Shown here: positions 1 to 31,169 of the stretch, piece after piece | How positions within the stretch are numbered: position 1 is the first letter of the stretch | How the letters are laid out: the number at the start of each line of letters is the position of its first letter | Source of the DNA: Macrostomum lignano | Lineage: Eukaryota | Assembly: GCA_002269645.1 (NCBI GenBank) | Contig: NIVC01000225.1 | Location: 62,001-126,000 of the forward strand | Length of the DNA: 64,000 nt | Direction of reading: 5' to 3' | Translations under genes and position numbers: made by a program | The notes under the pieces: generated by a model | What the model saw: the letters and a program-made list of their open reading frames with translations, nothing else | The model's database searches: none | Told to the model about the DNA's origin: nothing

Positions 1-275
1 CCCTCCCCCGGTCTCACTTTTTAATGGATTGCGGACTCTGGCTGCAGTCCGTTTGCTCACAGCGCAATTATAGCAATAGCAGTTTTTTGATTTCTTGAGA
101 TCAAAATTTACCACCTGAGTCAGTTCTAATTAAATTGCTTGCTCGATTGCTTCTGGTCTCTGCTTCCTACTGCTCATTGCGCTGGAAATGTTTGCCGGTC
201 TACTATGAGTAATATGAGTAGTATATATGTTTGTGCGTTTTGCTGGGCCAGTGTAGAAGAGACATGATGACGCTG

Positions 276-1420
276 CAGAACAGCCTAAGATACTGTAGAA
301 AAGCCTGTAGATAATACAGAGAGCCAGTAGATAATGTAGAGAAGCCTGTAGATAATGCAGAAAAGCCTGTAGATAATACAGAGAGCCAGTGGATAATGTA
401 GAAAAGCCTGTAGATGATGCAAAAGAGCCTGTAGATAATGTAGAAAAGCCTGTAGATGATGCAGAAGAGCCTGTAGATAATGTAGAGAAGCCTGTAGATA
501 ATGCAGAAAAGCCTGTAGATAATACAGAGAGCCAGTGGATAATGTAGAAAAGCCTGTAGATGATGCAAAAGAGCCTGTAGATAATGTAGAAAAGCCTGTA
601 GATGATGCAGAAGAGCCTGTAGATAATGCAAAAGTCTGTAGATAATGCAGAAAAGCCTGTAGTAGGTAGATAATGTAGAAAAGTCTAGATAATGCAGAAA
701 AGCCTGTAGATAATTAAGAAAAGCCTGTAGATAATGTAGAAAAGCCTGTAGATAATGCAAAAGTCTGTAGATAATACAGAGAGCCAGTGGATAATGTAGA
801 AAAGCCTGTAGATGATGCAAAAGAGCCTGTAGATAATGTAGAAAAGCCTGTAGATGATGCAGAAGAGCCTGTAGATAATGCAGAAAAGCCTGTAGATAAT
901 ACAGAGAGCCAGTAGATAATGCAGAAAAGCCTGTAGTAGGCAGATAATGTAGAAAAGTCTAGATAATGCAGAAAAGCCTGTAGATATTTAAGAAAAGCCT
1001 GTAGATAATGTAGAAAAGCCTGTAGATGATGCAGAAAAGCCTGTAGATAATGCAGAAAAGCCTGTAGATAATACAGAGAGCCAGTAGATAATGTAGAAAA
1101 GCCTGTAGATAATACAGAGAGCCAGTAGATAATGTAGAAAAGCCTGTAGATGATGCAAAAGAGCCTGTAGATAATGTAGAAAAGCCTGTAGATGATGCAG
1201 AAGAGCCTGTAGATAATGCAGAAAAACCTGTCGATAATGCAGAAAAGCCTGTAGGTAATACAGAGAGCCAGTAGATAATGTAGAAAAGCCTGTAGATAAT
1301 GCAGAAAAACCTGTCGATAATGCAGAAAAGCCTGTAGGTAATACAGAGAGCCAGTAGATAATGTAGAAAAGCCTGTCGATAATGCAGAACAGCCTGTGGA
1401 TGATGCGGAAAAGCCTGTGC
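276..1420. repeat. Intronic minisatellite, ~21-bp unit (GTAGATAATGCAGAAAAGCCT and variants)
   Basis: Direct tandem repetition. It lies upstream of the acceptor at 1499-1501, so probably inside a DOCK intron. It explains the spurious minus-strand ORFs in 203-1466. Confidence 0.95.
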
Positions 1421-1501
1421 ATAAATTTTGAAAATCCTGTACATGACTATAATACTTTGCTGTCAAAAATCTGTAACAGAGGCTGTAAATCTGTCGCGCA
1501 G

Positions 1502-3362
1502 GTTGACGACACCAAGCTGGAGTCGGGCCGGGCCTACGTGCAGATCACCTACGTGCAGGCCGAGACCAGCGAGGCGGACGGCAGCTCGCGCCACTTCGTG
1601 CTGGAGACGCCGTTCACCCGCAGCGGGGAGCGACACGGCTCGGTGGAGGATCAGTGGCGCCGGCGCACCCGCCTGACCGCCGAGGCCGCCTTCCCCACCG
1701 TGGTGAAGCGGCTGCGCGTCATCCGGTCGGAGCACGAGGATCTCAGCCCGTTGGCTGTGGCGGTGCTGGAGCTGCGGGCCGCCGCCGCGAAGATTCGATC
1801 GGCCGCCGAGGCGGAGCCGCCGGACATGAAGCGGCTGCAGATGGTCCTGCAGGGCTGTCTGGCCACTCAGGTGCGCGGCTGGCTTTGGAGCTGTTTTGGA
1901 ATTCATGCTCGCATCCTGGATTGATAGCGGCTTTTGGCTCAAGGCTTGAAGGCAGTAACGGACACCAGTCACATTCACACAGGCACCAGTCATATTCACA
2001 CAGGCACCAAGCCCCAGTCACAGGCACCAGTCACACAGGCTCCAGCCCCAGTCACACAGACACCAGAACCAATCACACATGCACCAGCCCCAGTCACACA
2101 GGCGCCAGTCACACAGGCATCAGTCACACAGGCGCCAGTCACACAGGCATCAGTCACACAGGCGCCAGTCACACAGGCGCCAGTCACACAGGCTCACCCC
2201 AGTCACAAGGCACCAGCCCCAGTCACACAGGCGCCAGTCACACAGGCACCTGTCACACAGGCTCATCCCAGTCACACAGGTATCAATCACACGGGCACCA
2301 GCCCCAGTCACACAGGCGCCAGTCACACAGGCATCAGTCACACATGCGCCAGTCACACAGGCATCAGTCACACAGGCGCCAGTCACACAGGCTCACCCCA
2401 GTCACACAGGCACCAGCGCCAGTCACAGAGGCACCAGTCACACAGGCACCAGCCCCAGTCACACAGGCGCCAGTCACACAGGCACCTGTCACACAGGCTC
2501 ATCCCAGTCACACAGGAATCAGTCACAGAGGCACCAGTCACACAGGCACCAGCCCCAGTCACACAGGCGCCAGTCACACAGGCGCCAGTCACACAGGCTC
2601 ACCCCAGTCACACAGGCACCAGCGCCAGTCACAGAGGCACCAGTCACACAGGCACCAGCCCCAGTCACACAGGCGCCAGTTACACAGGCACCTGTCACAC
2701 AGGCTCATCCCAGTCACACAGGAATCAGTCACAGAGGCACCAGTCACACAGGCACCAGCCCCAGTCACACAGGCGCCAGTCACACAGGCACCTGTCACAC
2801 AGGCTCATCCCAGTCACACAGGAATCAGTCACAGAGGCACCAGTCACACAGGCACCAGCCCCAGTCACACAGGCGCCAGTCACACAGGCACCTGTCACAC
2901 AGGCTCATCCCAGTCACACAGGAATCAGTCACAGAGGCACCAGTCACACAGGCACCAGCCCCAGTCACACAGGCGCCAGTCACAGAGACACCTATCACAC
3001 AGGCTCACCCCAGTCACACAGGCATCAGTCACAGAGGCACCAGTCACACAGGCTCACCCCGATCCCCGCAGGTGCACGCCGGCCCCATGGCCTACGCGCA
3101 CGCCTTCCTGGCGCCGAATCGCCGCATCGCCTACACTGGCGACCGCCGGCTGCAAGAGCTCGAGGAGGAGTTCGCCGAGCTGCTGCGGGCCTGCAAGCTG
3201 GGGCTCCGGGTGAACAAGGCGCTGGTCCGCTCAGACCAGATGGAGTACCACCAGTGCCTGGTCAGCGGCTTCGAGAAACTGCGCGACCAGCTGCTGCTGC
3301 AGGACGGCGACGACTGCCTGTCGCTGAGCAGCCAGTTCAGCCAGCTGGACTCGCACGCCTGA
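1502..3362 (+). CDS. DOCK9/10/11: DOCK-D/zizimin family Cdc42 GEF, C-terminal DHR-2 exons 1502-1870 and 3072-3362; the 5' part lies outside the window
   Basis: Translation gives AYVQITYV..FVLETPFT..G..HG.VEDQWRRRT.LT...FP.V.KR..LQMVLQG..TQ|VHAGPMAYAHAFL..VNKALVRSDQMEYH, which is the DHR-2 lobe B/C signature. The AGP.AYA.AFL motif fits the DOCK9-11 subgroup. Splice sites are CAG (1499-1501), GT at 1871 and CAG (3069-3071), in phase 0. Stop TGA at 3360-3362. Confidence 0.9.
1961..3060. repeat. Intronic CA-rich minisatellite (CAGTCACACAGG core with higher-order units) filling the last DOCK intron
   Basis: Direct tandem repetition between the donor at 1871 and the acceptor at 3071. Confidence 0.95.
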
Positions 3363-4159
3363 GCCGCTGGTTTGATGTTTTTAGCCTTCAAACTGGTTTT
3401 TAACCTTCTTTTCCCTCGCTTTCTTACCATTGTATTTCAACAGGGTTATCTTCAAGCCTACTAAGTCTTTATTAAGGCCACAAAAAAGTGTATTGCCTAA
3501 GCAGTCCCCTGAAATCCCGGCTCTCTTTGGGGTGCCGAACTTCTGTCTATGGCCAAAACCGGAAAACCGCGGCAGTGTGCTCAATACTGATGAGGCCGCC
3601 GCTTTCAGTTCTCATGAAATCCCAGTCTCACGCCTCCGTGTCTGGTGTTCCACTATTTAACCAGGAAATCGTTTATTTTATTACTCTTTTAACCAAGAAT
3701 TGTTTTCGAATTTTTCAATAGAATATTGTTTAACTGACAATATTAATTGCTTGCGGATTTGGCTGGCTTTGTAAGCCCCCCCCCAGCCTCTCTGCTCAGT
3801 ATTCCCGGCTAGGCGCCCAGTGTTAATCAGCTGTTTCTGTGGCGAAGTTTTAGTTCAGTACAATCAGCTTTTGTTAAGCGTATTTCTATGCACGTGAAGC
3901 ATCCGTGATTTTGCTCAGATATTTGTCGGCACTCCTGTACCCAATATTATTATATTTGAGCATTATATATTTACTAAATTGTAACAACACGCTAACCCCA
4001 GGCTGTGCGAATCATTGTGCACTTGCGTCCTTGACTGTGCCACTAGTAGAGCTGCTAGGTCTGATGTTCACTGACTTCCCGCGCTTAGCAGTGGCTACAA
4101 GCGATTTGTACTTTTGGTTTGTTAGAAGACACAACTGTATGGTTTGCACTTTTGGGATC

Positions 4160-4875
4160 GTAGGCTACAGAAACTGTACTTTTAGGGTTGTAGGCTATAG
4201 AAACTGTACTTTTAGGGTTGTAGGCTATAGAAACTGTACTTTTAGGGTTGTAGGCTATAGAAACTGTACTTTTAGGGTTGTAGGCTATAGAAACTGTACT
4301 TTTAGGGTTAGCTACAGAAACTGTACTTTTAGGGTTGTAGGCTATAGAAACTGTACTTTTAGGGTTAGCTACAGAAACTGTACTTTTAGGGTTGTAGGCT
4401 ATAGAAACTGTACTTTTAGGGTTAGCTACAGAAACTGTACTTTTAGGGTTGTAGGCTATAGAAACTGTACTTTTAGGGTTGTAGGCTACAGAAACTGTAC
4501 TTTTAGGGTTAGCTACAGAAACTGTACATTTAGGGTAGTTAGCTATAGAAACTGTACTTTTAGGGTAGTTAGCTATAGAAACTGTGTACTTTAAGGGTAG
4601 TAAGCTACAGAAACTGTGTACTTTCAGGGTAGCTAGCTATAAAAACTGTACTTTTTGGGTAGTAAGCTATAAACTGTACGTTTAGGGCAGTAAACGCAGC
4701 GACTGTACTTTTAGGGTAGTTAGCTATAGAAACTGTGTACTTTAAGGGTAGTAAGCTACAGAAACTGTGTACTTTTAGGGTAGTTAGCTATAGAAACTGT
4801 GTACTTTAAGGGTAGTAAGCTACAGAAACTGTGTACTTTTAGGGTAGTTAGCTATAGAAACTGTGTACTTTTAAT
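4160..4875. repeat. Minisatellite with 27-32-bp units (GAAACTGTACTTTTAGGGTTGTAGGCTATA)
   Basis: Direct tandem repetition; the unit drifts in sequence from left to right. Confidence 0.95.
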
Positions 4876-5367: not shown

Positions 5368-5763
5368 GACTGACTGACTGACTGACTGACTGACTGACTG
5401 ACTGACTGACTGACTGACTGACTGACTGACTGACTGACTGACTGACTGACTGACTGACTGACTGACTGACTGACTGACTGACTGACTGACTGACTGACTG
5501 ACTGACTGACTGACTGACTGACTGACTGACTGACTGACTGACTGACTGACTGACTGACTGACTGACTGACTGACTGACTGACTGACTGACTGACTGACTG
5601 ACTGACTGACTGACTGACTGACTGACTGACTGACTGACTGACTGACTGACTGACGTCTGACTGACTGACTGACTGACTGACGTCTGACTGACTGACTGAC
5701 TGACTGACTGACTGACTGACTGACTGACTGACTGACTGACTGACTGACTGACTGACTGACTGA
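5368..5763. repeat. (GACT)n microsatellite, ~99 units, with two GACGTCT interruptions
   Basis: Seen directly. Confidence 0.99.
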
Positions 5764-6156
5764 ATTATCACTCTGGGCAGGAGATTGGGATTAGATCATG
5801 GCTGGGGATATTCCCCAGCGCATCCGGCTTGAGATCAGCTTCCTTGATCGGGCTTTCAATTTTTCTCCTAATCCTATCGAGCTCTGCCGGTCCGGCTCAG
5901 GAGCGGCACTGAGCTGAGAGATGCTCCCGCATGAATCTCATTAGACTGGCCGTCCGGTTAAAGGATGCCCACGAGCTCGGCCGCCCCGGCTGGCTGCACC
6001 TGTAATTTCCCGTCCTTTGTCCGCCAGCGACCCCATTGGACGGTTTTGGCATTCGTCCGGCCGCTGCCGCCCTCTTCCAATATTTAGAAGGGTAGCCGGC
6101 TCTGCTCCCGCCGGAGATCTGCTTCTGCTGCTCTCTGCTGACCGCCGTATCAGAAG

Positions 6157-6876
6157 ATGAACTTCTTCAGCCTGCGGCTGCTGCTCGCCTGCTGCCTCAT
6201 GGCCGCCTTGGTTGACTGCAGGGCCCCGTTTGTGCCAAAGTTGCTCCAAGATCCGGACCGCTTGCTTTCTATGACCAGATACGGTGAGTGCTATGACTGA
6301 GGGTGAGCTGTGTATGACCAGACACTGACAGCTATGACTGAGTGGTGAACTGTGTATGACCACAGACACACTGACAGCTACAACTGAGGGCTGAGTCATG
6401 TATGACCAGACACTGACAGCTACAACTGAGGGCTGAGTCATGTATGACCAGACACTGACAGCTACAACTGAGGGCTGAATCCTGTATGACCAGACACTGA
6501 CAGCTACAACTGAGGGCTGAATCCTGTATGACCAGACACTGACAGCTATGACTGAGTGGTGAGCTGTGTATGACCACAGACACTGACAGCTATGACTGAG
6601 TGGTGAGCTGTGTATGACCGGTCAGATCCTGAGAGCTTTCGTGGCAGCCTTTTAAATTGACCTAAAACTTGAAGCGCTCATGGATTCCGAGCCCGCAGTC
6701 ATCCTAGCAACAAAATCCTCATTTTCCCAGAGGCCATGATAGCGATCATGAGTGAGGTGTGCGAGGACTCGTGCCGCTATTCGCACCCCGGCGTACCCGA
6801 GTGCTCGGGCTACTACACGGGCAACTGGCACATGTACAACGACTGCGTGTGCACCTCCTGCAGCTTTTTTGGTTGA
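6157..6876 (+). CDS. Small secreted Cys-rich (defensin-like, CS-alpha/beta type) peptide precursor, 90 aa; exons 6157-6283 and 6731-6876
   Basis: ATG at 6157, donor G|GTGAGT at 6284, acceptor TTTTCCCAG at 6730 (phase 1 on both sides) and TGA at 6874-6876. The spliced protein is MNFFSLRLLLACCLMAALVDCRAPFVPKLLQDPDRLLSMTRYEAMIAIMSEVCEDSCRYSHPGVPECSGYYTGNWHMYNDCVCTSCSFFG. It has a hydrophobic signal peptide, CxxxC and CxC motifs, and GC3-rich codons like the neighbouring genes. Confidence 0.75.
6289..6620. repeat. Intronic minisatellite, 42-bp unit
   Basis: TATGACC recurs at 6401, 6443, 6485 and 6527. Confidence 0.9.
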
Positions 6877-7130: not shown

Positions 7131-7177
7131 CCTTTGAAACTTCACAATGGCAAATCGGTCCGCTTAAGGTTTGCCTC

Positions 7178-7410
7178 TTCTCAGCTCTCTTCTCCCTCTC
7201 ATCTCCTTCTCTCCTCTCCTCTCCCTTCTCTCCTCTCCTTCCTTCTCTCCTCTCCTCTCCTCTCTCTTCTCTCTCCTCTTCTCTCCATTCTCTCCCTTCT
7301 CTCCGTTCCCTTCTCTCCTCTCGTCTTCTCTCTTCTTTGTTCCCTCACTTCTTTCTCCTATCTCTTTTTGCTCTTCTCTATTCCTTCTCCTCTCTCTCCC
7401 TTCCTCTGAC
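7178..7410. repeat. CT-rich low-complexity polypyrimidine tract
   Basis: Almost pure C/T on the plus strand. Confidence 0.9.
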
Positions 7411-8187
7411 GCAGTCATTCGTAGGTTCTCTATCTGGCCCTTCAGCTACTAAGAGTAGACTAATGAGCAAATTATAACGAATTTCTGATTGTTCACTGGA
7501 TCGATCAGCTCGTGATCTGGGGCGATAAGACGGTCCCTGAGAGTGGAGCTCTTTGTGGTCGATGCTGGCTCGCAGGCATCCCTAGAGTGCCGCCCCCCAC
7601 ACCGGCACATCTGTCTGCAGCAGTTCCTGAGCTTTGAATAATTCACCCACTCGGATGAGGAGCTCCTGGGGCAGCTGCCGTGCCCGATATACAATCTTCA
7701 TTACGGCAGGACTCGCTATTCTCAACTGCGAGTTGCTATGGGCATTTTTTGCACGAGTAGGAATTAATTTGTAAGCAATTTATTTTTTTGACACTGACAA
7801 TGCTGTAATTATACTATTTTAGACAGCAATATAACTTCAAGGAACAGTCCGATCAGTGGTTGCGCGCACACTAAAATTGATAATAAAGGAACCAACTCTG
7901 TCGGGGAAAAACTTTGGGCTTCTAAGATTTCCTGTGTGTTCGAGTTCGCAAGCTGTGCTGCTCAGCTGGGTGCTTGCTGAGTGAGTCTGCTTGGCTGCGT
8001 AGGCCAGAATCGATGATTGACTGAACCAGCATCCTATAGACTGCAGGGGCTCATTTAATTTGTGCGGATAATGAGTCACCACTAATGCAGCTGAGCAGCG
8101 TTCGGATTAAAAATGTCCATCACAATTTAACAAACAACCATGGACAGGAAAACAACGGGTCACGGAAAGAGGAAACTTACAGACAAC

Positions 8188-8810
8188 ACCTATCTCACTT
8201 TCACCCACCTCACTCTCATCCCATCTCACTAACCCATCTCACTCTCTGTCAATCTCACTCTCATCAATATCACTCTCACCCACCTCATTCTCACCAATCT
8301 CACTCTCGCCCATCTCACTCCCACCCATCTCACTCTCTGGCCATCTCACACTCACCTATTTCACTCTCATCAATCTCACTCTCACGAATTTCACTCTCAC
8401 CCATCTCTCTCTCATCCCATCTCACTCTCTGTTCATCTCACTCTCATCAATCTCACTCTCACCCATCTTACTCTCACCCCATCCTACTCTCACCCATCTC
8501 ACTCTCATCAATCTCACATCCCACCCATCTCACTCTCCCCATCTCACTCTCATCAATCTCACTCTCACAAATTTTACTCTTACCCATCTCAATCTCACCT
8601 ATCTCACTCTCACTCATCTCTTATCAAACTCAATCTCACTCATCTCACTCTAACCCATCTCACTCTAATCATTTCACTCTCATCAATCTCACTCTCACAA
8701 ATTCACTCTTACCCATCTCAATCTCAGCAATCTCACTCTCAATCATCTCACTCTCATCAAACTCAATCTCACCCAACTCACTCTCATCCATCTCACTCAC
8801 CCCATGTCAT
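8188..8810. repeat. Minisatellite, ~15-bp unit (CTCACTCTCATCAAT / CTCACTCTCACCCAT)
   Basis: Degenerate tandem repetition just downstream of the globin stop codon. Confidence 0.9.
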
Positions 8811-8892: not shown

Positions 8893-11800
8893 CTAGCCCA
8901 GCTGCTGCTGCTGCGATGGCCCGTTGGCGCTGCTGCCTCGGCCAGCAGCCTCGGCCCGGAGCCTGATGCCGACCTCCATCTTGCCGGTGATGTAGCGGAA
9001 CACAGCCAGCCAAGCTCGGCTCACTGCTCTGCTGTAGCTGGGGCCCAGCTTCTCTTGCAGGGCAAAGCTGACGGCGGGCCACAGCCTCTGCATAGGAATC
9101 GGGGCAGCGGCTCGAATTGAAAAGCTGCAGGTGAACTCAAGCTCAGCATACTAATTGCCACTTGCTCAAGGTGGAGAGCAGACCAGCTCAGCCGTTGGCG
9201 CATTCTGACTCTTGAGCCAAACTACCCTGGGGTTCGAATCCGTGTGCCGATCACCCTGCCTTGCAGCAGTGCCCAAAACCTTAGTGCAAACTCACTGCAT
9301 CCCATCTCACCCATCTAATTCTCAAGGTGACTCTGAGGTTCAAGCACATGTGGGTGCATTCGTGGGGCTGTAAATGGGGTTGTAGCCTTCAGATGCGCCG
9401 CGCAATAACTGCGGCTGAGTAAGCTGTCGGTTGCACATCTGGCCCAATTGGCCAGATACGAGCGTCATAGTAATAATTATTATTATTATTAATACTGTTA
9501 TTATTGTTACTATCATTATCATGATTATGATTATAATTATTGCTACTGTTATTCATGGGCAGCTAAAAGCAGAACGCTGCACTCTCACATTCAAGCAAAT
9601 TTTGACATGAAATCCCCATTTTATCCCCATTATCCCCTGGAATCCCAAGAAAGAGACTGCATGGGATGACAGCTGTCTCGGCGTTTCTCTAGTCAGCTGG
9701 TCCGACCAGTTTTTGCTTCCAGTCAGACTGATGGAAGGAGAATGCTTCCATTATCTTTTAAGCATTGTTGAGATAAGTTGAGCTACAACTGAATTTCTTT
9801 AGATTTAAATTTGGGGTGAGTTTAGAATAACTTACAAGAATTTTTCGGACCTTTAGGGATCAACACAACGGGAATTCATCTCTCCATCTTTTTACAAAAC
9901 TTTTTTTCGTATATTCTGGCTGTTTTCTGATAGAATTCGCTGATAAGCTGCAGTTCGGCATGGAGCTGAAGTGCTCCATGCTAATCCTGCAGATCTCTGC
10001 GGATCTATACCAGTTGAACTCAGTACTTCAGGCTTCACAAATCTGTTGGAATTGCCACGCGTGAAGGCTTGTTCCCCGCAATTTCTTCAGCTCATAAATA
10101 TTTACAGCTTTGGCGGACTGTCGACAAAATCGCAGTTTATGAGCGCAAAGGGGCGATGCAGATCGCACTAGAAGATTTTATTGCTGCTCAAAGGAAGCGC
10201 CACTGAAAGTTCCAATCGGCTGCCAAAATGGAAATTTCTCTGCGCTTCCGGTCTGATCTCAGACCTGAGATAGATTTTTTTGTCTAAGGAGTCAGAAGCC
10301 AGAATATAAATTCAACTGTGGATAAAGGCATTACTGGGGTTGGACAAAATATTCTGCAGACAAAGGATGGGTCTTCGATTGAAAATTCTAACTCCCAAAA
10401 GCTCTTCCCCTATTGTACCCACATTGAATAACGTGCAATAAACTAGCTGGCTAACTCTCCTGCCCGAAGCTCTACCCCAAATGTACATTGACTGGCGTGC
10501 AATAAACTGTCTGGCTAACTCCCCTGCCCGAAGCTCTACCCCCAATTTACATCGACTAACGCAATAAACTGGCTGGCTAACTCCCCTGCCCGAAGCTCTA
10601 CCCCCAATGTACATCGACTAACGCAATAAACTGGCTGGCTAACTTCCCTGCCCGAAGCTCTACCCCCAATGTACATTGACTGGCGTGCAATAAACTGGCT
10701 GGCTAACTCTCCTGCCCGAAGCTCTACCCCCAATGTACATTGACTGGCGTGCAATAAACTGGCTGGCTAACTCCCCTGCCCGAAGCTCTACCCCCAATGT
10801 ACATTGACTGGCGTGCAATAAACTCGCCAACTGTACTGTTCAAAGCTTTTTTCTGCATTGTAATTTTTTCATTACCTCTGGTTTGGCTCTGCCCCCCCCC
10901 CCCCGCGGCCAAAGAGAAGCGAGTTTACTAACCATGAGGTGCTCCGGCCTTACTTGGAAGGCCCAGTGTGCCTGGCCCAGAGCCAGCAGCACTGAATTGA
11001 GCATCAGCGCGTCCTCCAGGCAGTCCACGGCGGCTCCCAGCGCCTGCATCACCGCCAGGCCGTGCCGCTCCAATTTGCGCAAGTCAAATCGCTGCTGACA
11101 GCGACCGTCTGGAGCGACGCCGACGCCGCCGCCACCTCCGCTGTGCTCGGGAAGGCCGTCGCCTTCAAAATGTTCTTCCTGAGTGCCGTCGGGACACATC
11201 AGCCTGCAGAACAGGCCGCGGAGGTCGGCGTCGGTCTCGAATAGCCTGACGATGACAGTGAGAGGAAATCAAACTGGATGAAATTTTCCTTATTTTGCCC
11301 GCCCCAATTCAATTATTTTTCTGTTCTAATCTGCTCAATCAGCGGCTAATTTACTAATGAATCGGTAAGCTGGAGGCCACTGGAAGGTTGATTCTAATAT
11401 AATTTCGACTTGAGAAAAAATATGCCGAGAGCTATACTGCTTTGCTCCGAGGATGTCCGGGTTGCTCAGCCTACTTTTGGGCCTGCTTGAAGCAAAAGCG
11501 CTCAAGTTAGATAAGGTGCAGTTAGAGGTGAGTAGAGGTGCCGGGGAGGGAGTGCAATTGTACATTGAGGTGGGTGCAGATGGCAAGGGAGTGCAAGTGT
11601 ACATTGAGGTGGGTGCAGATGGCAAGGGAGTGCAAGTGTACATTGAGGTGGGTGCAGATGGCAAGGGAGTGCAATTGTGTGCATTGTGGTGGATGCAGAT
11701 GGCAAGGGAGTGCAAGTGTGCATTGTGGTGGATGCAGATGGCAAGGGAGTGCAAGTGTGCATTGTGGTGGATGCAGATGGCAAGGGAGTGCAAGTGTGCA

Positions 11801-12361
11801 TTGTGGTGGATGCAGATGGCAAGGGAGTGCAAGTGTGCATTGTGGTGGATGCAGATGGCAAGGGAGTGCAAGTGTGCATTGTGGTGGATGCAGATGGCAA
11901 GGGAGTGCAAGTGTGCATTGTGGTGGATGCAGATGGGAAGGGAGTGCAAGTGTACATTGAGGTGGGTGCAGATGGCAAGGGAGTGCAAGTGTGCATTGTG
12001 GTGGATGCAGATGGCAAGGGAGTGCAAGTGTGCATTGTGGTGGATGCAGATGGGAAGGAATTTCACGCTGAGACATGGTTATATGATTATATGAATAAAT
12101 GGAATTTGTTACAGTTGTGCGCGTAGAGTTCAACGCTGCGAGCGCGTGTTTGCGGCTGTAGAATTAATGAAGCAATTAGCAGCCTCCAGACCTGATGAAG
12201 ATTGCTATGCCTGTCCCGGCCAAGTCCAGACTCAGTAGCCGCCATGTGTCGCGCACCAGCGCCACCTGAACCGGGGTCAGGTGATTTCCAATCTGATCGT
12301 TCAGACATTGCTCGACCGACCGCAGCTGGTGGGGCCTGGTCTTGGAGCAGCCACAGCCCAT
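8893..12361 (-). CDS. Globin, globin-X/neuroglobin-like, with predicted N-terminal acylation, 225 aa; exons 12361-12192, 11245-10933 and 9087-8893
   Basis: N-terminus MGCGCSK; A/B helices LTPVQVALVRDTW..GIAIFIR|LF; distal His in LERHG; proximal His in LGQAH; G/H helices LWPAVSFAL..AW..VFRYIT. Both introns are GT-AG and lie at the conserved globin positions B12.2 and G7.0. Exon lengths 170+313+195 sum to 678 nt, in frame. Confidence 0.9.
9170..9545 (+). mobile_element. tRNA-derived SINE-like element in globin intron 2, antisense to the gene
   Basis: A-box-like CCAGCTCAGCCGTTGG, B-box GGTTCGAATCC at 9231-9241, a ~230-bp body and an (ATT)n-type tail at 9471-9545. Confidence 0.65.
10420..10825. 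repeat. Intronic minisatellite, 62/64-bp unit, ~6 copies
   Basis: CAATAAACT recurs at 10436, 10500, 10562, 10624, 10688, 10752 and 10816. Confidence 0.95.
11546..12057. repeat. Intronic minisatellite, 39-bp unit, ~13 copies
   Basis: GAGTGCAAGTGTGCATTGTGGTGGATGCAGATGGCAAGG repeated inside globin intron 1. Confidence 0.95.
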
Positions 12362-13273: not shown

Positions 13274-15421
13274 TCAATCTCCAAGGACGTTGGCGAAGAG
13301 CGGCTCGCTTTCCACCTTCCTTGACTTGAGCATCTGAGCCCTGGCCATGTCCTTCGCCTTGCTCATCACAACCGCTTGCTCGGCAGCCTCCGCCCACTTG
13401 ATGGAGTGGTCCAGGGCGCTGGTGTAGGTGCCGCCGCGCTCAGGGTACACGTGAGACATCACCGTCTGCGGGATGAGCGAGTTCGATTTAAAGGTGCTTA
13501 ATTTTCAGAGAGCCGTTATAGCTGAAAAGCGAAGAGCTCACCTCCATGCGGTCATTCTTGGGCTCCAGGGTGCCCCACTGCTGGCGCTTCTGCACCGCCT
13601 TCCACGGCGTGGTCTCCACCGGGCGGGTCTTGGTCTTGCGGAACGGCGCCCGCAGCGGAATCTCGCCGTACATCCGCTGGCTGGGGCCGGTGCGCTGGAA
13701 GTTGAAGTACAAATCCGTGTTGTCTGGCGTGGTCTCCTTGAGGAACATGGACACCATGGCCGGGGCGCCGTACGGCTTGCGGTTTTTGTAGGGCGGGAAC
13801 AGCATGCTCATCATCTTGTCGCACTGGTCGATGGCGGAGTAGCTCGGCCCGCGAATGTCCACGATGAGATACTTTAGCCAGCGGTAGCGGCCCATCCGAC
13901 GGTTCAGGATGCGGCGAGTCACCTGGTTATTTGATGATTTGAAACAGTTTTTACATGAAAACTGCAGGTAACAGCGTAGAATTTTGTTATATGAAGTTTT
14001 CCCACCTCGATTTCGCACTTGGTCCGGTTTGCAACGGACCTGAAGCGGCCGGGATCGACTAAGAATGCCTGAATCATCTCGTCCGACAGGAACACGATGT
14101 ACTCCTTGAGGTGCACGTCGGCGAACACGCTCATGCAGCCGATAACCACGCCCTCCTTCTCCAGATGCCCGACTGGTAGCTTTCTACGCGTCTCCCTGGC
14201 TTCGTCATCTTTTCCTGGTCCGCGCAGAACCTCCACCTTCTCGCCATCCAGGTAGCGCTGAAAGTGTCGCTGGGCGTCGTCCATGTCGCCTTCCTCGCCT
14301 TCGCCGCCTTCTTCTTCGTCGTCATCTTCGTCGTCCTCGTCGTCGTCCGCTTCAGCGCGGCGTGGCGAGGCGGCGCCAGGCGGCAGCGATGTTGGCGTTT
14401 CTTCTTCGCTAGGCGAGGCGACCGGGGCAGAGATGGGGGAGGTGGGCTGCGGCGAGGCAGCCCTGGCACCGGCGGACGACGACGGCTGAGCTGCCTCCGA
14501 TGAGGCGGACTGAGCATTCTGTTCGGAGCTGCGGCCAAGGCTGCCTGGGCTGGCGCCGATTCCTTGGCTGGGATCGGACAGTGGATCGCCGCCGCGACTG
14601 CCTCTAACACCGCCAGCATCATCGCCAAGTCCGACCGCTCCACCGCTGGCATCGTCGCTGGGGCCGCCGCCGCCAGCGCTGCCGCCGCTCGCCGGGTCTC
14701 TGCCTCCAGTGGTGTCGCTGAGGCTGCTGGGGCCGGCGCTGCCACCAGCACTGCCGGCTGAGGCATCCGGCGCAGAATCGGGGGCGGCCAAGGCCGCAAT
14801 GCCATCAATGCCACCAGAGGGCGCGCCGATGTCTTCAGAGGCGCCGCTCTGATCTAGAGACTCATACTCAATCGACGCCTGGCCACCCAGTCTGCGAGGC
14901 GGCGAATTAAAAATAGCTTTCATTTTCTCAACTTAACCAGTGACAAACGGCAGAAACAAAGCGTTGTCTTACGCGTTAGACAAGTTGGAGTCGCTGTCCA
15001 TGATGATGTTGATGTTGAGGTCGGCGGTGGCTCCAGTTGGCTGCAGCTCCGTCTCCACCCGAGTATGCTGACCGGTCAGCGACCTGTGCACTTGAACATC
15101 CCGAATCCCCGGCACCGTGTTGCTGTTGTTTCCCGCTCTGATCACCCGCAGCATCTGCTCGTACACCCCGCCGGCCCGCTTGGGCTCATAGCGGTACAGG
15201 CCATGGCTGCAGGACAGGCAGGTGCTCGGGTCGGCGCTGCTTTTGCAGCTGCTGTCGCTGCTGCTGCAGCGGGAGTCGTTGCTGCTGCTTCTCTGGCTGT
15301 CTTTCGATTGCATGTTTTGTCTGGGCAGCAATTGTTGGAAGTCTGTCGGAACTGGCGCTTGCAGTGTAGCTGCGTGAGTGACGAGCTCAATCTGTCTGAG
15401 TGGATTCTGGCTTTCAGCCAT
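13274..15421 (-). CDS. Hypothetical protein, 635 aa, with a Ser/Gly/acidic low-complexity middle and a globular C-terminal region that may be a degenerate KH-like domain; exons 15421-14973, 14891-14006, 13922-13542 and 13465-13274
   Basis: Three short GT-AG introns (81, 83 and 76 nt) with compatible phases (2, 0, 0) join four ORF-track segments into 1908 nt. Codons are GC3-rich. Confidence 0.75.
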
Positions 15422-17348
15422 AGACAAAACTACGAAAAGAGCTTGCCTACCTGCCTTAGCAGGGCTATCAAATGCACCCACTTACATGTCAATCAAATAT
15501 GTTATAGTTTTTTACCACGGCTTAGTGACCTAATTAAGAGTTCTGGCTCTGAGAGATTTTCTCAGGCCGGTTTATTTTATTGAAAAATTTGGCAATAATA
15601 AGGTTACTGGTGATGGGAAGCTTGAAATTGGCAAATGGATAATTAGATACACTACTTGTGAGTAGAGTGTTATGGAATAAGCCAAAAGTCATGTTAGATG
15701 CAAGCTACGAAAACTCTTAGACCCAGGCACTGGGTAGACAAGCCGATAAATATTGTCCAGAACTCTAATGTACATAGAAGGGGTGTGAGCAGTGTACTTC
15801 AACACGAAACTACGAGAGTCAATATAATAGTGCACACTCACACACAACAAGTAGCATACATGTATATGCTGGGCTAATGATGTGTTCTTTGCAAGAACAG
15901 CTGGATTGAAACAAAGTAATTGAAGTAGAGTTTAGTAATTTAGTATATTTACCAAAGCTATATAACATTTACGAAAATTTTAATTAGATTTAATATACCG
16001 TACATAAGCAAAAAATACTACAGGTAATTTTAGTAGTCCTTGCATTTAAGTACATGTATCGACACTCATATGAGTTCTCGGTGCAAGTTTAGAATTGCGC
16101 GCCATCCTCAATTTACGAGTAACGTCGACTTGAAAAAAAGTCACGTGATAACTTGATTTTTCTGACACAAATTGTTGTCACATTAAGCTTTGAGCTTGTG
16201 AATTGTCAATCCGCAACAAACACTGACAGCCAGAGGCAAAAAGGTTACTACTGGAGGGCTGAACTAATGGACTACACACGCTATAACGTTCTTTAACTAT
16301 ATGTGCGTATTTGCTCAGTAGTAGATCGGCATGATTGATCGGAGTCTATATTTCTATAAAATGTAGTGAGAGTAATATATAATGATCAAATTACAACTAA
16401 ATGTAATTTTCCTTTTTCCTTTACAAAGCGCTCACGGCGCCCCCATGGGGTTTGGTCGGTCTTTTTCCGACCTGCATCAACCAGAGGAAGTGGCAGACCG
16501 TTTCTCGGTGGAGAGATATGCGAGGACAGCCATGCAATCAGCAGGTTGAATTGTTTGCCGCAGCCCAGATACAACGCGACGAGTCGTCTAATCATTCAAA
16601 CCGATGCAGTGGCGTGTACATGGCCGCGCTGACGCACCGCTACTGCCTCAGCTGTTAGCAGTTTATCAGGGTGCGGCGCCATGGGGCGAATTGTGATCGC
16701 AGAGAATTATGGGTGCCTGGCTCTACGGTCTACTAAGTTGTCTCTGCTGTGGCTCAACTGTTATCATTTTGGACGATCGAATAATTCAATATGTCTGAAT
16801 TTATGACCTAATTAAGAATAATCATAACTTTGTTCCTAAAAGTAAATCATAGAATACTTTTTGTTTAAGCTCCTATGCATAAATTTTCTTTTAAGGCGGC
16901 GCGATCAAACCCACGTGCAGCACGACTGGCATAAGGCATAGTCTATACTAATCTGCACAGATTACGTGCATGATATTGATAGCTTATTTAAGCTAATAAG
17001 TCGTAAGGCTTAGTATAATATGTAACATTCTGTAGTGAAGTGCTCTATGTCATTCTAACGTTGATTTATCTATTATCAAAATAATAGTACTTCACTGTAA
17101 TTTTATTTATATCCCTTTTATTTTGTTATCAGATTCAGATTTATGTTTTTTATTTCATCAGACATCAGTTGAGTATATAATGGGCCTATATACTAGTCCT
17201 AGTAGCACACAGTTTGCTATATATCTAGCTTTTGGCCTATTTCTTAATTATTTCTTCTTCAATCAAACCACTATTATTATTAAATGCTTAAACAAAGAAA
17301 AAATTTGATATTATAATGCCAATTACTATTTAATACTAGGCGTACAAT

Positions 17349-23700: not shown

Positions 23701-25779
23701 TTAGCCATTCACGGCTCTCCTGCAGCCGAGGAGGCGGCCTTCGGGGAGGCTGCGCGATCGCTGCCGTCCGACGCCATCGATGTTGCGGGCTGCAACCGGA
23801 ACCCCCCTGACCGGCTGCGCGTGCAGGTGGCAGCGACAGCCGCACCCGCCGTTGGCAACCACCGGGCTGGCGTCTCTCAGAACAGCGTCAGCGCGCTCGG
23901 AGGTGGAGTTGTTGAGTTTGCTGGGGTGCAGCTCCCTGGCTGCGCCCCGCTTGGCGGCTGCAGCCCCGGCGGCTGCCAGGCAGGCTTGGCAGCGGACCCG
24001 GCCTGCGCGGGGGTGCCTACCAGCGCAGGCTGCCGCAGCCAGACGCCGGGCGAGGCTCCAGCCTCGTTGAAGAATGCCTCGTCGCAGTAGGATATACAGC
24101 CAGGGGTCCAGCACCTGGTTGATGCTGGCCGCGTACACCGCTCGGAGGTCTTCCGTGCAGTCCGGCTTTCCTCCCAGTGCGTTCCATAGGACTCGCACCT
24201 GCGGCGAGGGAATTTTTAATTGAACTTATCCACTGATTTCCAGGATATTAACTGGCATATTACGTTCTAACAGTGCTGGCCAAAATGCATGTAAGAGAGT
24301 CGAAAAAGCTGTCGTGCTAGCTCAGTAATTAATTAATAAGCACAGTTTTATGAGTAGCTATATGAGAATGAATTAACCCGCGGTGCATTTAAGCGCTGAC
24401 AGACAGACAGGGCCCATCCAGGGGTCACATGGGGTGATAAATTTTTGTTTAGTAGCAGTTAGCAGGCCGCAGGGACGGACGGAAACCGGTGATGAGAAGT
24501 GATAGCGCTTGCATTTCCCCAGCGGTTCCCGCTCCCTTTGTGCCTTTCTGGCTGATTGAGGGGCGGCTAAATGAGCAGCCGTCGCGAAATTCGTGTTCGC
24601 CTCTCGAGCTGGCCCGCCGCTCTCCTTCCCCATTGATCATTCGAGGACAGTAGGGAATTGGGGAGCGCGAGAGAAGACAGATTGATGATGCACTTGCCGA
24701 AGAGGAATATCGACTTTCCAATCTCCGCCGCGGAATAGCGGGCGATCAAATTTCCTTTAAGAGGTTTCCTAGAATTAGAATCAAGCTACTTCCAGTATTT
24801 TTCCAAAATTCGAACCCTACCATTAGAGGACTCCAGCACAACGCGAACGTGATTGTGATGGCCACCAGTAGCAGAACCAGCTGCAGCTCCATGTGCCGCA
24901 TCATTTGGTGGCCGCCGCCCCCACTGGCGTTGCTCCCCCGGTGCTGCCTAGCGGCTGGTTGACCCGGCAGGCAACGGACGCGCTGGTGCTGCAGCCCGAT
25001 CGCGACTCCCTCAGCACCATCCTGCGCAGCCTGCGGACGGCCAGCAGCGAGTGAATGACCACAATGTTGCACACGGCTATCAGGCCAATTAGGACGAGGT
25101 TCCAGACGCCGAACCAGGCGGCGTAGACGCGGTGCGCCATCTCCGTTGAGTGCGAGCGCACAAAGCACCAGGTGCCAGGGAACTGCAGGCTGTAGGCGCC
25201 GGCACCGAGCAGAGGCAGGCCGGCCAGAAGGAAGGCGAGGCCGAACACAGCCAGCAGGCAGAGCCGCGCCTTTCTGTGCTGCTGCTCGTGCGAGTAGTTC
25301 TGCCACAGCTTCAGGCACAGCACCCGCTCCACTGACATGCACAAAACCAGCAGCGGCGTGCTGAGTGCCATGGCGGTCATGACGAACGCATGCGCCTGGC
25401 AGGCTGGGTAGCCGCCCAGCCAAGCGAGACGGAGCCGCTGGACGCTAGCGTTGAACGTGGCTGTCCCGTAGACAATCAGAGGCGCAGATGAGGTCAGCAC
25501 CTGCCCGAGCATGTCATTAAGAATGAGCGCGGTCAGCAGCGTGTAGAACAGGGTTCGACTCTTGCTCGGCGTCCTCCGTTGCAGCACCAACAGTGCCAGA
25601 AGGTTGCCCGCCACGCCCACGGCAAAGAGGCTCAGCGTCTTGGCCACATTCACGCCGCTTCGACTGGGAATATCGCAGCTCCAGTCTACCTGCGGCTGCT
25701 GGCAGCTGAGCAGCCGGGAGCAGCAGCTGGAGTAGTTAACCATCGGGTCTGATTGGTTTCGAAATCCGGTTTGCTGCAT
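23701..25779 (-). CDS. Prostanoid receptor-like class A GPCR (EP2/EP4-like); exons ~25779-24821 (apparent 1-nt frameshift near 24918-24939) and 24198-23701
   Basis: GVAGNLLAL (TM1), L...D..G (TM2), MSVER (TM3), QFPGTWCF (ECL2 motif of prostanoid receptors), MELQLVLLL..CWSPLM|VR (TM6, with the intron at the end of TM6 as in prostanoid receptor genes) and DLRAVYAASINQVLDPWLYILLRR (TM7). The start codon is uncertain (ATG at 25779 or 25743). Confidence 0.85.
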
Positions 25780-30451: not shown

Positions 30452-31021
30452 CTACAGCAGCTTGAGGTGCCCGGTGACCTGGTCAATGACGGGCGAAGGC
30501 CCGGGCCCGATGCCCAGCACGGTGGCCGAGCCGGCAGCGATCTGGGTCCGGCCGGCGTCGTGGATGACCACAGCCACAAGGCCTAGCGAGTGCGCGATCG
30601 CCTGCAGTTCGTACAGCCGGTTCTCGTCGCCGTCGGCCCGCAGCGCCACCTTCTGCTGGCCGGTGCGGAGCCACTTGGCCAGCGAGGCCGGGTCCGCCCG
30701 CTGCGCCCGCCGGTAGCAGCCGACGGCGGCGTGGGCGCACTGGGCGGCCGACTTGCCGCGGGACATGCCCAGATCTGTGCGGGTCACTAGCGTCATCTTC
30801 CACTCCGTGTAGCCGCTGAAGTCGCCGCCGCCGCCACCATCGTTGCTGTCTTCTCCGGCGCTGTCGCTGTCCCAGGAGTCCGACGCGGCCGGCGCCCCGG
30901 ACTCGGCCGCTGCTGGAGGCGCATCGCCGTCGCCAGCGGTGCCGCCAAACCGAGACCGGGCGAGCCAGCCGGCCAGCACTCCGGCCAGCAGGGCGGACAG
31001 CGAGGCCAGCCAGGGGGTCAT
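30452..31021 (-). CDS. PTRH2: Peptidyl-tRNA hydrolase 2 (Bit1), 189 aa, intronless CDS
   Basis: An N-terminal hydrophobic anchor, then KMTLVTRTDLGMSRGKSAAQCAHAAV..GQQKVAL..IHDAGRTQIAAGSATVLGIGPGP..IDQVTGHLKLL, the PTH2 signature. ATG at 31021 is preceded by TTTGCAG-CCGCC. Confidence 0.95.
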   Translation of the reverse strand: MTPWLASLSALLAGVLAGWLARSRFGGTAGDGDAPPAAAESGAPAASDSWDSDSAGEDSNDGGGGGDFSGYTEWKMTLVTRTDLGMSRGKSAAQCAHAAVGCYRRAQRADPASLAKWLRTGQQKVALRADGDENRLYELQAIAHSLGLVAVVIHDAGRTQIAAGSATVLGIGPGPSPVIDQVTGHLKLL

Positions 31022-31169
31022 GGCGGCTGCAAAATCAGTGCAAATACGGCTGCAGAGCGCGTGTCCATGAGCCTCAGGATTGCTTGGGTGGGTCACAAAT
31101 AATAGGCCTGACCAGATGGGATTTGGGAACTTCGAGATTAGGGATTTTAGACTGAACCCGAGGATCTGA

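What the first reader, a model, noticed from the sequence alone, without database searches (positions are those of the whole stretch)
6157..6876. Unannotated anionic defensin-like peptide apparently lacking one whole disulfide pair relative to mussel MGD-1
Seen: a two-exon 90-aa precursor, absent from the ORF track, with a signal peptide and the C-terminal domain C-EDS-C..PE-C-SGYY-TGNWHMYND-C-V-C-TS-C-SFFG. Known (recalled, should be verified): mussel defensin MGD-1 reads [30 protein letters not shown], with bridges C4-C25, C10-C33, C14-C35 and C21-C38. The peptide aligns with this, but the equivalents of C4 and C25 are both absent, i.e. exactly one bridge. That leaves the CS-alpha/beta core plus the C-terminal bridge. 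The domain is acidic (6 D/E versus 1 R) and ends in Gly, a possible amidation signal. It may therefore be a non-classical antimicrobial, toxin, inhibitor or signalling peptide.
Basis: partly seen in the sequence, partly recalled or inferred. Interest (0 to 1): 0.7.

Follow-up and report, generated by a model that had tools for sequence, protein, structure and literature searches.

The report
Orphan secreted six-cysteine flatworm peptide
This is a real two-exon gene of the flatworm Macrostomum lignano, already in GenBank as a hypothetical protein, that encodes a small acidic secreted peptide whose six cysteines are spaced like those of a mussel defensin missing one bridge, but neither sequence nor structure searches could prove that it is a defensin.

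Summary
Exon 1 (6157-6283) and exon 2 (6731-6876) join through GT/AG sites into a 90-aa precursor. It has a signal peptide, a 31-residue spacer and a C-terminal six-cysteine acidic domain that ends in Gly.

The gene is not unannotated. It is 100% identical to M. lignano BOX15_Mlig002908g1/g2 (PAA49515.1, PAA87550.1; UniProt A0A1I8G296 "Secreted protein"), from a transcript-based annotation, so a spliced transcript is implied.

Coding is supported. GC3 is 0.83 against 0.46 at codon positions 1 and 2. A second genomic copy shows 2 synonymous and 0 non-synonymous differences.

The peptide is an orphan. No true relative appeared among 1.84 billion representative proteins, the PDB, Pfam or metagenome contigs.

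The recalled MGD-1 sequence was verified. The cysteine array C-x3-C…C…C-x-C-x2-C does equal the mussel/nematode eight-cysteine CSαβ array minus one bonded pair. Non-cysteine similarity to MGD-1 beats cysteine-fixed shuffles (p=0.002, a single post-hoc comparison).

Membership is unproven:
- There is no Defensin_2 hit.
- hhalign probability is 0.9%.
- Foldseek finds nothing.
- AlphaFold gives helix plus hairpin only at low confidence.

Verdict: a plausible divergent CSαβ-like peptide (about 45%). It would be notable because flatworms are reported to lack this family.

The parts
6077..6089 (+). CCAAT (6077-6081) and TATA-like ATATTTAG (6080-6087), about 70-80 nt upstream of the ATG; putative core promoter
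   Evidence: Read directly from the sequence. Identical in the second genomic copy. Function not tested.
6120..6153 (+). Pyrimidine-rich tract followed by CAG, 3 nt before the ATG; possible spliced-leader trans-splice acceptor
   Evidence: Read from the sequence. 38.8% of M. lignano genes are trans-spliced (PMC5730564). Inference only.
6157..6283 (+). Coding exon 1: residues 1-42 plus the first base of codon 43. It covers the signal peptide (residues 1-21, 6157-6219) and the spacer RAPFVPKLLQDPDRLLSMTRY.
   Evidence: Product identical to PAA49515.1. GC3 0.81.
6284..6730 (+). Phase-1 GT-AG intron of 447 nt, holding a 42-bp minisatellite (6296-6619, 7.6 copies)
   Evidence: In the second copy the intron is 256 bp shorter through repeat copy number.
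6731..6876 (+). Coding exon 2: residues 43-90 (EAMIAIMSEV-C-EDS-C-RYSHPGVPE-C-SGYYTGNWHMYND-C-V-C-TS-C-SFFG) plus the stop codon at 6874-6876
   Evidence: GC3 0.83. No difference from copy B across the exon.
6760..6861 (+). Six-cysteine core, C53 to C86, with array C-x3-C-x9-C-x13-C-x-C-x2-C. Proposed bridges C53-C81, C57-C83 and C67-C86 (inferred).
   Evidence: Cysteines at residues 53, 57, 67, 81, 83, 86. Cysteine-anchored alignment to MGD-1. AlphaFold secondary structure H41-60, E68-71, E81-84 at low confidence.

Best explanation
A real, transcribed, lineage-restricted gene of Macrostomum lignano (Mlig002908.g1; the window is NIVC01000225.1, about 62001-126000) encodes a small secreted peptide.

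Shown:
- The two-exon coding structure.
- Identity to a deposited transcript-based gene model.
- A strong coding signature.
- A signal-peptide-type N-terminus.
- Six cysteines in an acidic C-terminal domain that ends in Gly.
- No detectable relatives anywhere.

Inferred:
- Signal peptidase cuts near residue 21.
- The roughly 69-residue product, or a shorter form cut after a single Arg, folds into a cysteine-stabilised helix plus β-hairpin (CSαβ-like). The CxxxC of the helix (C53, C57) would be bridged to the CxC of the last strand (C81, C83). A third bridge C67-C86 would tie the C-terminus to the post-helix loop, as in the fourth bridge of mussel MGD-1, myticins and nematode ABFs.
- The canonical N-terminal bridge (Tarr C2-C6) is missing. 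A long hydrophobic N-terminal extension of the helix (AMIAIM) may take its place.
- The terminal Gly may be converted to a Phe-amide.
- With net charge -3 to -5, and with the basic residues of the MGD-1 hairpin loop replaced by M/Y/N/D, it is unlikely to act as a cationic membrane-disrupting defensin. I think it most likely acts outside the cell by binding a specific target, either as a defence effector against a defined microbial molecule or as a ligand or inhibitor.
For: Gene reality:
- The splice sites and reading frame hold.
- The product is 100% identical to PAA49515.1 / PAA87550.1 / A0A1I8G296 'Secreted protein'.
- The annotation was built from StringTie/TACO transcripts plus TransDecoder (PMC5730564).
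- GC3 is 0.83, in the top 0.23% of windows. Neighbouring bona fide coding ORFs have GC3 of 0.64-0.77.
- The second copy, on NIVC01003856.1, carries 2 synonymous and 0 non-synonymous changes in 273 nt. Non-coding sequence shows about 14 substitutions in about 867 nt, plus indels.

Secretion:
- The n/h/c regions are present, with a -3/-1 site after C21 that leaves exactly six cysteines.

CSαβ-like scaffold:
- The array matches Tarr reference positions C3, C4, C5, C8, C9 and C10. That is the mollusc/nematode eight-cysteine array minus the bonded pair C2-C6.
- Random placement of six cysteines in 48 residues gives this exact array in 0.07% of trials, and any CxxxC…CxC order in 4.9%.
- The alignment to MGD-1 scores 54, against 28.9 ± 5.8 for cysteine-fixed shuffles (p=0.002). 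Shared non-cysteine residues are S, P, G, G, Y, G, W, H. BLASTP gives 9/24 identities.
- The AlphaFold full-length model places a helix over CxxxC (41-60) and a hairpin (68-71, 81-84) with CxC in the last strand.
- Anionic CSαβ defensins have precedents.
Against: No sequence method reaches significance:
- Pfam gives no hit for the precursor.
- For the domain alone, the only Pfam matches are noise-level: Myticin-prepro E=1.6 and a zinc finger E=1.4.
- One of ten cysteine-fixed shuffles scored better against a defensin-like model (PF24552, E=0.0024). Such sub-threshold hits therefore reflect the cysteine array alone.
- phmmer against the PDB gives none at E<=10. hhalign gives a probability of 0.9%.
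- Similarity to two other defensins (BmKDfsin3, plectasin) is not above shuffles. MGD-1 was picked post hoc.

Structure is weak:
- Full-length mean pLDDT is 63.6, and only 53-68 over the hairpin region.
- The domain-only model has pLDDT 48 and no strands.
- Foldseek gives no CSαβ match.

Other points against:
- The conserved GxC motif and the third canonical bridge are absent, and the loops are longer than in MGD-1.
- No orthologue or paralogue exists to test whether the cysteines are conserved.
- No expression or activity data were found.
- A published HMM and BLAST survey that included this very assembly reported no CSαβ peptides in flatworms.
Confidence: 0.45

Rival explanations
1. It is an orphan secreted cysteine-rich peptide with a fold unrelated to CSαβ, such as a helical or irregular disulfide-rich fold. 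The match of its cysteine spacing and a few residues to MGD-1 is coincidence. Small cysteine-rich peptides are numerous, and CxC and CxxxC spacings are common.
For: - All database-level tests are negative.
- A cysteine-fixed shuffle reaches a better defensin-model score than the real sequence.
- The domain-only AlphaFold model shows a single helix and no strands.
- The canonical third bridge and the GxC motif are missing.
- A published survey found no CSαβ peptides in flatworms.
Against: - The exact array is rare under random placement (0.07%).
- Non-cysteine similarity to MGD-1 exceeds cysteine-fixed shuffles (p=0.002).
- The secondary-structure elements of the full-length model fall where the CSαβ alignment predicts them.
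Confidence: 0.38
2. It is a precursor of a processed, C-terminally amidated signalling peptide (neuro-endocrine, pheromone or reproductive). Cleavage after a single Arg (R35 or R41) would release a disulfide-rich peptide of about 49-55 residues ending in Phe-amide, which would act on a receptor. This concerns function and is compatible with either fold.
For: - The C-terminal Gly sits directly before the stop codon.
- The acidic, non-membrane-active character argues against a lytic role.
- The spacer carries single Arg residues.
- The gene is lineage-restricted, and reproduction-related genes are reported to evolve rapidly in Macrostomum (abstract of PMC7336406).
Against: - There is no dibasic processing site.
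- The gene is absent from the reproduction-related and germline supplementary tables that could be searched.
- No similarity to any neuropeptide family was found.
- A terminal Gly is a weak signal on its own.
Confidence: 0.12
3. It is not a functional protein-coding gene. The ORF would be a TransDecoder call on a low-level or non-coding transcript in a repeat-rich intergenic region.
For: - It has no homologues.
- It sits among minisatellites.
- The two copies are so similar (about 98-99%) that the 0 non-synonymous differences are only weak evidence of constraint.
Against: - Strong third-position GC periodicity in both exons, in the spliced frame.
- Clean splice sites that preserve the frame.
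- A signal peptide followed by an even number of cysteines.
- The gene is annotated in both copies of the assembly and also has a UniProt entry.
Confidence: 0.05

Closest known systems
Mussel defensin MGD-1 (PDB 1FJN; Pfam PF01097 Defensin_2) and mollusc eight-cysteine defensins
   Same: - The order and near-spacing of six cysteines: CxxxC in the helix, one post-helix Cys, and CxCxxC at the C-terminus.
- Shared S-x-P-G after the helix, G-Y in strand 1, and G-x-W-H in the hairpin loop.
- Both are secreted peptides made from a precursor with a signal peptide.
   Different: - It lacks the C4-C25 bridge and the GxC motif.
- Its loops are 4 and 3 residues longer.
- It is acidic (net -5) instead of strongly basic.
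- It has a 31-residue N-terminal spacer and a long hydrophobic helix extension.
- It has no Defensin_2 HMM match, whereas MGD-1 scores E=2.6e-10.
Myticins (PF10690) and nematode ASABF-type antibacterial factors, including the six-cysteine ASABF-6Cys-α
   Same: - They share the eight-cysteine array C2-C6, C8, C9, C10 with C-terminal CxCxxC.
- ASABF-6Cys-α shows that six-cysteine derivatives of this array exist.
   Different: - ASABF-6Cys-α keeps C3-C6, C8 and C9, so its missing cysteines are not a bonded pair. The flatworm peptide keeps C3, C4, C5, C8, C9 and C10, so it is missing one bonded pair.
- The Myticin HMM match is far below threshold (9.4 bits against a cut-off of 28.5) and is no better than shuffles achieve on other models.
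AdDLP-type bacterial defensin-like peptides that have only the cysteine-stabilised helix motif (four cysteines)
   Same: They show that the CxxxC/CxC double bridge can exist without the canonical third bridge (Table 1 of PMC5116183).
   Different: They are bacterial, have four cysteines and no C-terminal extra bridge. No sequence similarity was tested here.
Anionic insect CSαβ defensins (Bombyx, Plutella, Spodoptera)
   Same: They are negatively charged CSαβ peptides, some with reported activity. Charge alone therefore does not exclude the family.
   Different: They keep the canonical insect six-cysteine array (C2-C4, C6, C8, C9) and match Defensin_2-type profiles. This peptide does neither.

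Membership tests
CSαβ (cis-defensin / scorpion-toxin-like) superfamily | Cysteine-stabilised helix motif: CxxxC followed later by CxC | tested here: met
   C53-EDS-C57 and C81-V-C83 are read from the sequence. By chance this order occurs in 4.9% of random six-cysteine placements.
CSαβ (cis-defensin / scorpion-toxin-like) superfamily | Third canonical disulfide linking the N-terminal segment to β-strand 1 (Tarr C2-C6; MGD-1 C4-C25) | tested here: not met
   There is no Cys between the signal peptide and C53. Tyr71/Thr72 stand at the C25 position. A different third pair, C67 and C86 (Tarr C5-C10), is available.
CSαβ (cis-defensin / scorpion-toxin-like) superfamily | α-helix packed on a two- or three-stranded antiparallel β-sheet | tested here: inconclusive
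   The single-sequence AlphaFold full-length model gives H41-60, E68-71 and E81-84, but mean pLDDT is 63.6 and only 53-68 over the hairpin region. The domain-only model has pLDDT 48.3 and a helix only. Foldseek against the PDB gives no CSαβ hit.
CSαβ (cis-defensin / scorpion-toxin-like) superfamily | Actual disulfide connectivity Ci-Cj, Ci+4-Cj+2 | not testable with these tools
   Needs mass-spectrometric mapping or NMR of the folded peptide.
Defensin_2 (PF01097; arthropod and mollusc defensins, including MGD-1) | Match to the family HMM above the gathering score | tested here: not met
   There is no match at E<=10 for either the precursor or the domain. The positive control MGD-1 scores 40.5 bits, E=2.6e-10.
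Defensin_2 (PF01097; arthropod and mollusc defensins, including MGD-1) | Conserved GxC motif at β-strand 1 | tested here: not met
   GGYC is invariant in the three defensins aligned. The peptide has SGYY/T at that place.
Defensin_2 (PF01097; arthropod and mollusc defensins, including MGD-1) | Significant pairwise or profile similarity to members | tested here: inconclusive
   The cysteine-fixed shuffle test gives p=0.002 against MGD-1, but p=0.20 and 0.52 against two other members. BLASTP gives 18.5 bits. hhalign probability is 0.9%. phmmer against the PDB finds none.
Myticin (PF10690) | Match to the family HMM above the gathering score | tested here: not met
   9.4 bits, E=1.6, against a cut-off of 28.5. 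None of ten shuffles hit this model, but one shuffle hit another defensin-like model at E=0.0024, so this level of score is noise.
Classical cationic antimicrobial peptide | Net positive charge | tested here: not met
   Net charge at pH 7 is -5.0 for residues 43-90 and -3.1 for residues 22-90. pI is 4.35-5.04.
Classical cationic antimicrobial peptide | Antimicrobial activity, or induction by microbes | not testable with these tools
   No expression or activity data were found for Mlig002908 in the searchable literature and supplements.
Secreted protein (classical ER signal peptide) | n/h/c regions with a -3/-1 cleavage site | tested here: met
   The n-region is MNFFSLR. The h-region is LLLACCLMAALV (mean Kyte-Doolittle 2.96). 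The site is VDC|RA. The UniProt name is 'Secreted protein'. SignalP itself was not available.

The most novel reading that the evidence does not exclude
This would be the first CSαβ (cis-defensin-type) peptide of a flatworm. That phylum was explicitly reported to lack the family, in a survey that included this same assembly (PMC10414684). The peptide would carry a six-cysteine array not in Tarr's catalogue (positions C3, C4, C5, C8, C9, C10). It would keep the 'extra' mollusc/nematode C-terminal bridge, would have lost the canonical N-terminal one, and would have turned acidic. That would imply that the spiralian eight-cysteine defensin scaffold survived in basal flatworms in a form invisible to HMM searches, probably with a changed, non-lytic mode of action.
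Probability: 0.3. Interest if true: 0.6.

Novelty: new variant of a known kind. Interest (0 to 1): 0.4.

Why it matters
Homology-based surveys concluded that Platyhelminthes have none of the major lophotrochozoan antimicrobial peptide groups, and called the absence of CSαβ peptides surprising (PMC10414684).

A divergent CSαβ-like peptide in Macrostomum, an early-branching and experimentally tractable flatworm, would have three consequences:
- It would show that the absence is at least partly a detection problem.
- It would add a new disulfide variant to the scaffold.
- It would give a testable case of a defensin-type fold with an acidic surface.

If the resemblance is coincidental, this is simply one more orphan secreted cysteine-rich peptide, of local interest only.

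The gene model itself adds nothing new, because it is already deposited.

Tried and rejected
**Homology and fold searches that gave nothing usable**
- The word-indexed homology search of 5.8 billion proteins returned only the protein itself.
- The exhaustive phmmer of 1.84 billion representatives returned self plus five long repetitive proteins. Their scores come from summing 6-13 weak repeat matches such as GYYTGNYG, with no conserved cysteines. I rejected them as artefacts.
- tblastn of the peptide against the window found no paralogue.
- The metagenome-contig scan found no relative.
- Pfam gave nothing for the precursor, and phmmer against the PDB gave nothing for the domain.
- I tried to gather a mollusc defensin family for a proper profile. 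A 40-mer returned only the PDB chain itself. Only a three-sequence profile could be built, and hhalign against it gave a probability of 0.9%.
- Foldseek of both AlphaFold models against the PDB gave only E>5 hits to lysyl-tRNA synthetase, or nothing. Foldseek is weak on peptides this small and on low-confidence models, so this is not a strong negative.
- The sub-threshold Myticin-prepro hit was tested against ten cysteine-fixed shuffles and dismissed as noise.

**Literature and data searches**
- A search for 'Mlig002908' found nothing in full texts.
- It also found nothing in the supplements of five M. lignano or helminth papers. Some of those supplement files are truncated.
- 'cis-defensin' together with 'flatworm' returned no paper.

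**Families rejected on cysteine pattern (from my own knowledge, not tested with tools)**
EGF, Kazal, Kunitz, ShKT, knottin/ICK, β-defensin and big defensin, insulin-like peptides, hepcidin.

Full report
**1. What is in the sequence**

Exon 1 is 6157-6283, with donor ACG|GTGAGT. A phase-1 intron of 447 nt follows. Exon 2 is 6731-6876, with acceptor TTTTCCCAG|AG. The joined CDS is 273 nt and gives a 90-aa product that ends ...CVCTSCSFFG*.

The mechanical ORF list shows only the two halves, of 47 and 46 aa. Cysteines lie at residues 12, 13 and 21 (signal region) and at 53, 57, 67, 81, 83 and 86.

The exon-2 part has 6 D/E, 1 R and 2 H, giving pI 4.35 and net charge -5. The whole post-signal product has net charge about -3.

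The N-terminus has the n/h/c layout of a signal peptide. The h-region has mean Kyte-Doolittle 2.96, and the only sensible -3/-1 site is VDC|RA after residue 21. Cleavage there leaves exactly six cysteines.

**2. Is it a gene?**

The 90-aa product is 100% identical to a deposited protein of the flatworm Macrostomum lignano. The accessions are PAA49515.1 and PAA87550.1 (BOX15_Mlig002908g1 and g2) and UniProt A0A1I8G296, 'Secreted protein'. The window therefore comes from NIVC01000225.1 of assembly GCA_002269645.1.

The gene is not unannotated in public records. That annotation was built only from RNA evidence: StringTie/TACO transcripts, a de novo transcriptome and TransDecoder ORFs (PMC5730564). 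A transcript with this splice junction is therefore implied, although I could not inspect reads.

Two further points support coding:
- GC at codon positions 1/2/3 is 0.46/0.46/0.83, in both exons. The position-3 excess is in the top 0.23% of all 273-nt windows of the 64-kb window. Neighbouring ORFs with firm Pfam domains have GC3 of 0.64-0.77.
- A second copy lies on NIVC01003856.1. Both copies lie downstream of a DOCK9-like gene.

Between the two copies, the CDS differs at two synonymous sites and at no non-synonymous site. The aligned non-coding sequence shows about 14 substitutions in about 867 nt, several indels, and a 256-bp difference in the copy number of the intron's 42-bp minisatellite. 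With divergence this low, that is only weak evidence of constraint.

**3. Relatives**

None were found:
- The indexed search of 5.8 billion proteins returned only the protein itself.
- The exhaustive phmmer of 1.84 billion cluster representatives returned self plus five long repeat proteins. Their scores are sums of many weak repeat matches, without conserved cysteines.
- Pfam, PDB sequences, the window itself and JGI metagenome contigs gave nothing.

At the sequence level the peptide is an orphan. I could not search the rest of the M. lignano genome or other Macrostomum transcriptomes.

**4. The defensin comparison**

The 39-mer is in the protein collection with Pfam PF01097.

In Tarr's reference array for the CSαβ superfamily, mollusc defensins, myticins and nematode ABFs use positions C2-C6, C8, C9 and C10. 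Typical insect defensins use C2-C4, C6, C8 and C9. ASABF-6Cys-α uses C3-C6, C8 and C9 (PMC5116183). The flatworm peptide fits C3, C4, C5, C8, C9 and C10, which is the eight-cysteine array minus C2 and C6. I recall that list as correct but could not verify it with a tool.

A local alignment puts all six cysteines in register with MGD-1. It adds identities at S, P, G, G, Y, G, W and H, and scores 54. Shuffles that keep the cysteines fixed score 28.9 ± 5.8 (p=0.002). The same test against two other defensin fragments is not significant, with p=0.20 and 0.52.

Random placement of six cysteines in 48 residues gives the exact array in 0.07% of trials, and any CxxxC…CxC order in 4.9%. These numbers are suggestive. 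However, the comparator was chosen post hoc, and real cysteine-rich peptides are not random.

Every database-level test fails:
- Defensin_2 detects MGD-1 at E=2.6e-10 but does not detect this peptide.
- BLASTP gives 18.5 bits.
- hhalign against a three-defensin profile gives a probability of 0.9%.
- The only domain-wide Pfam match is Myticin-prepro at E=1.6. In a control, one of ten cysteine-fixed shuffles hit a defensin-like model at E=0.0024. Such hits reflect the array and nothing more.

**5. Structure**

Single-sequence AlphaFold of the precursor gives mean pLDDT 63.6 and pTM 0.51. It places a helix at 41-60, which covers C53 and C57 and ends at S60. It places strands at 68-71 (SGYY) and 81-84 (CVCT).

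From memory, the MGD-1 NMR structure has its helix over residues 7-16 and strands over 20-25 and 33-37. The predicted elements therefore fall where the cysteine-anchored alignment would put them.

Confidence over the hairpin region is low, with 10-residue block means of 68, 56 and 53 for residues 61-90. The isolated 47-residue domain gave pLDDT 48 with only a helix. Foldseek against the PDB found no CSαβ match for either model.

**6. Most likely mechanism**

Shown: a signal-peptide-bearing precursor with an acidic six-cysteine domain.

Inferred: after secretion the domain forms three disulfides. Two would clamp the helix to the last strand (C53-C81, C57-C83). One would tie the C-terminus to the post-helix loop (C67-C86).

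The hydrophobic helix extension AMIAIM may substitute for the missing N-terminal bridge. The terminal Gly may be amidated.

The basic residues of the MGD-1 hairpin loop (WHRLR) are replaced here by WHMYND, and the net charge is negative. A cationic membrane attack is therefore unlikely. Binding of a specific target fits better, whether the peptide serves defence or signalling.

Anionic CSαβ defensins are known but infrequent (PMC5506212).

I give the CSαβ-like reading about 45% and an unrelated fold about 38%. A primarily signalling, amidated-peptide role gets about 12% and is compatible with either fold. A non-coding artefact gets about 5%.

**7. Novelty and interest**

The gene model is already public. 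The defensin-like reading appears to be new. A survey that used HMM, BLASTP and TBLASTN searches of 33 flatworm species, including Mlig_3_7, concluded that flatworms encode no CSαβ peptides and called this surprising (PMC10414684).

If the fold is confirmed, this would be a new disulfide and charge variant of a known scaffold in a phylum thought to lack it. On present evidence it remains a hypothesis resting on one sequence, so I score interest at 0.4.

Noticed in passing
window 6296-6619 (intron); L002 about 10137-10200: The intron holds a 42-bp minisatellite with 7.6 copies here and about 1.6 copies in the second genomic copy. This gives a 256-bp length difference, while the flanking intron sequence is about 98% identical.
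   Followed up: partly
window 5368-5763: A (GACT/CTGA)n microsatellite of about 99 copies lies 400 bp upstream of the gene. It is also present upstream of the second copy. It creates a spurious 144-aa 'SVSQ' ORF on the minus strand.
   Followed up: no
window 274-1441, 1963-3053, 4148-4873, 8187-8809, 10421-10824, 11547-12000: There is a dense series of minisatellites with periods of 15-64 bp. Several of them generate long artefactual ORFs, for example 1654-3213 with an 'SHTGASHTG' repeat. One repeat ORF (3905-4594) even passes the Pfam gathering score for Pentapeptide_4 (42.9 bits against a cut-off of 38), which is a low-complexity artefact.
   Followed up: partly
window 6077-6089 and 6120-6153: CCAAT and a TATA-like box lie about 75 nt upstream of the ATG. 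A pyrimidine tract plus CAG ends 3 nt before the ATG and could be a spliced-leader trans-splice acceptor. Both features are identical in the second copy.
   Followed up: no
window 7174-7336 and beyond: A CT-rich low-complexity tract lies about 300 bp downstream of the stop codon and is also present, with differences, in the second copy. No canonical AATAAA occurs before 7882, so the 3' end of the mRNA is unclear.
   Followed up: no
window 24901-25890 (-), 30452-31753 (-), 45406-46395 and 46566-47198 (+): Neighbouring coding ORFs have firm Pfam domains: a rhodopsin-family GPCR (7tm_1), peptidyl-tRNA hydrolase PTH2, and two exons of an ammonium transporter. None has an obvious functional link to the peptide.
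   Followed up: partly
L001 1-1532 and L002 1-6985 (upstream of the window start): The DOCK9-like gene upstream of the peptide gene is modelled as 1673 aa in this copy, ending about 8.5 kb upstream. In the other copy it is 2088 aa and ends about 3 kb upstream. The two copies therefore differ in gene model, in intergenic repeat content, or in both.
   Followed up: no
window 13274-15421 (-): An annotated 635-aa gene has no Pfam family on record. Its largest ORFs (13919-14923 and 14969-15481) also gave no Pfam hit.
   Followed up: partly
method note: Two false-positive traps appeared. phmmer whole-sequence E-values as low as 5e-15 came from long repeat proteins that sum many weak matches. A cysteine-fixed shuffle of the domain reached E=0.0024 on Pfam PF24552 'Defensin-like'.
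   Followed up: yes
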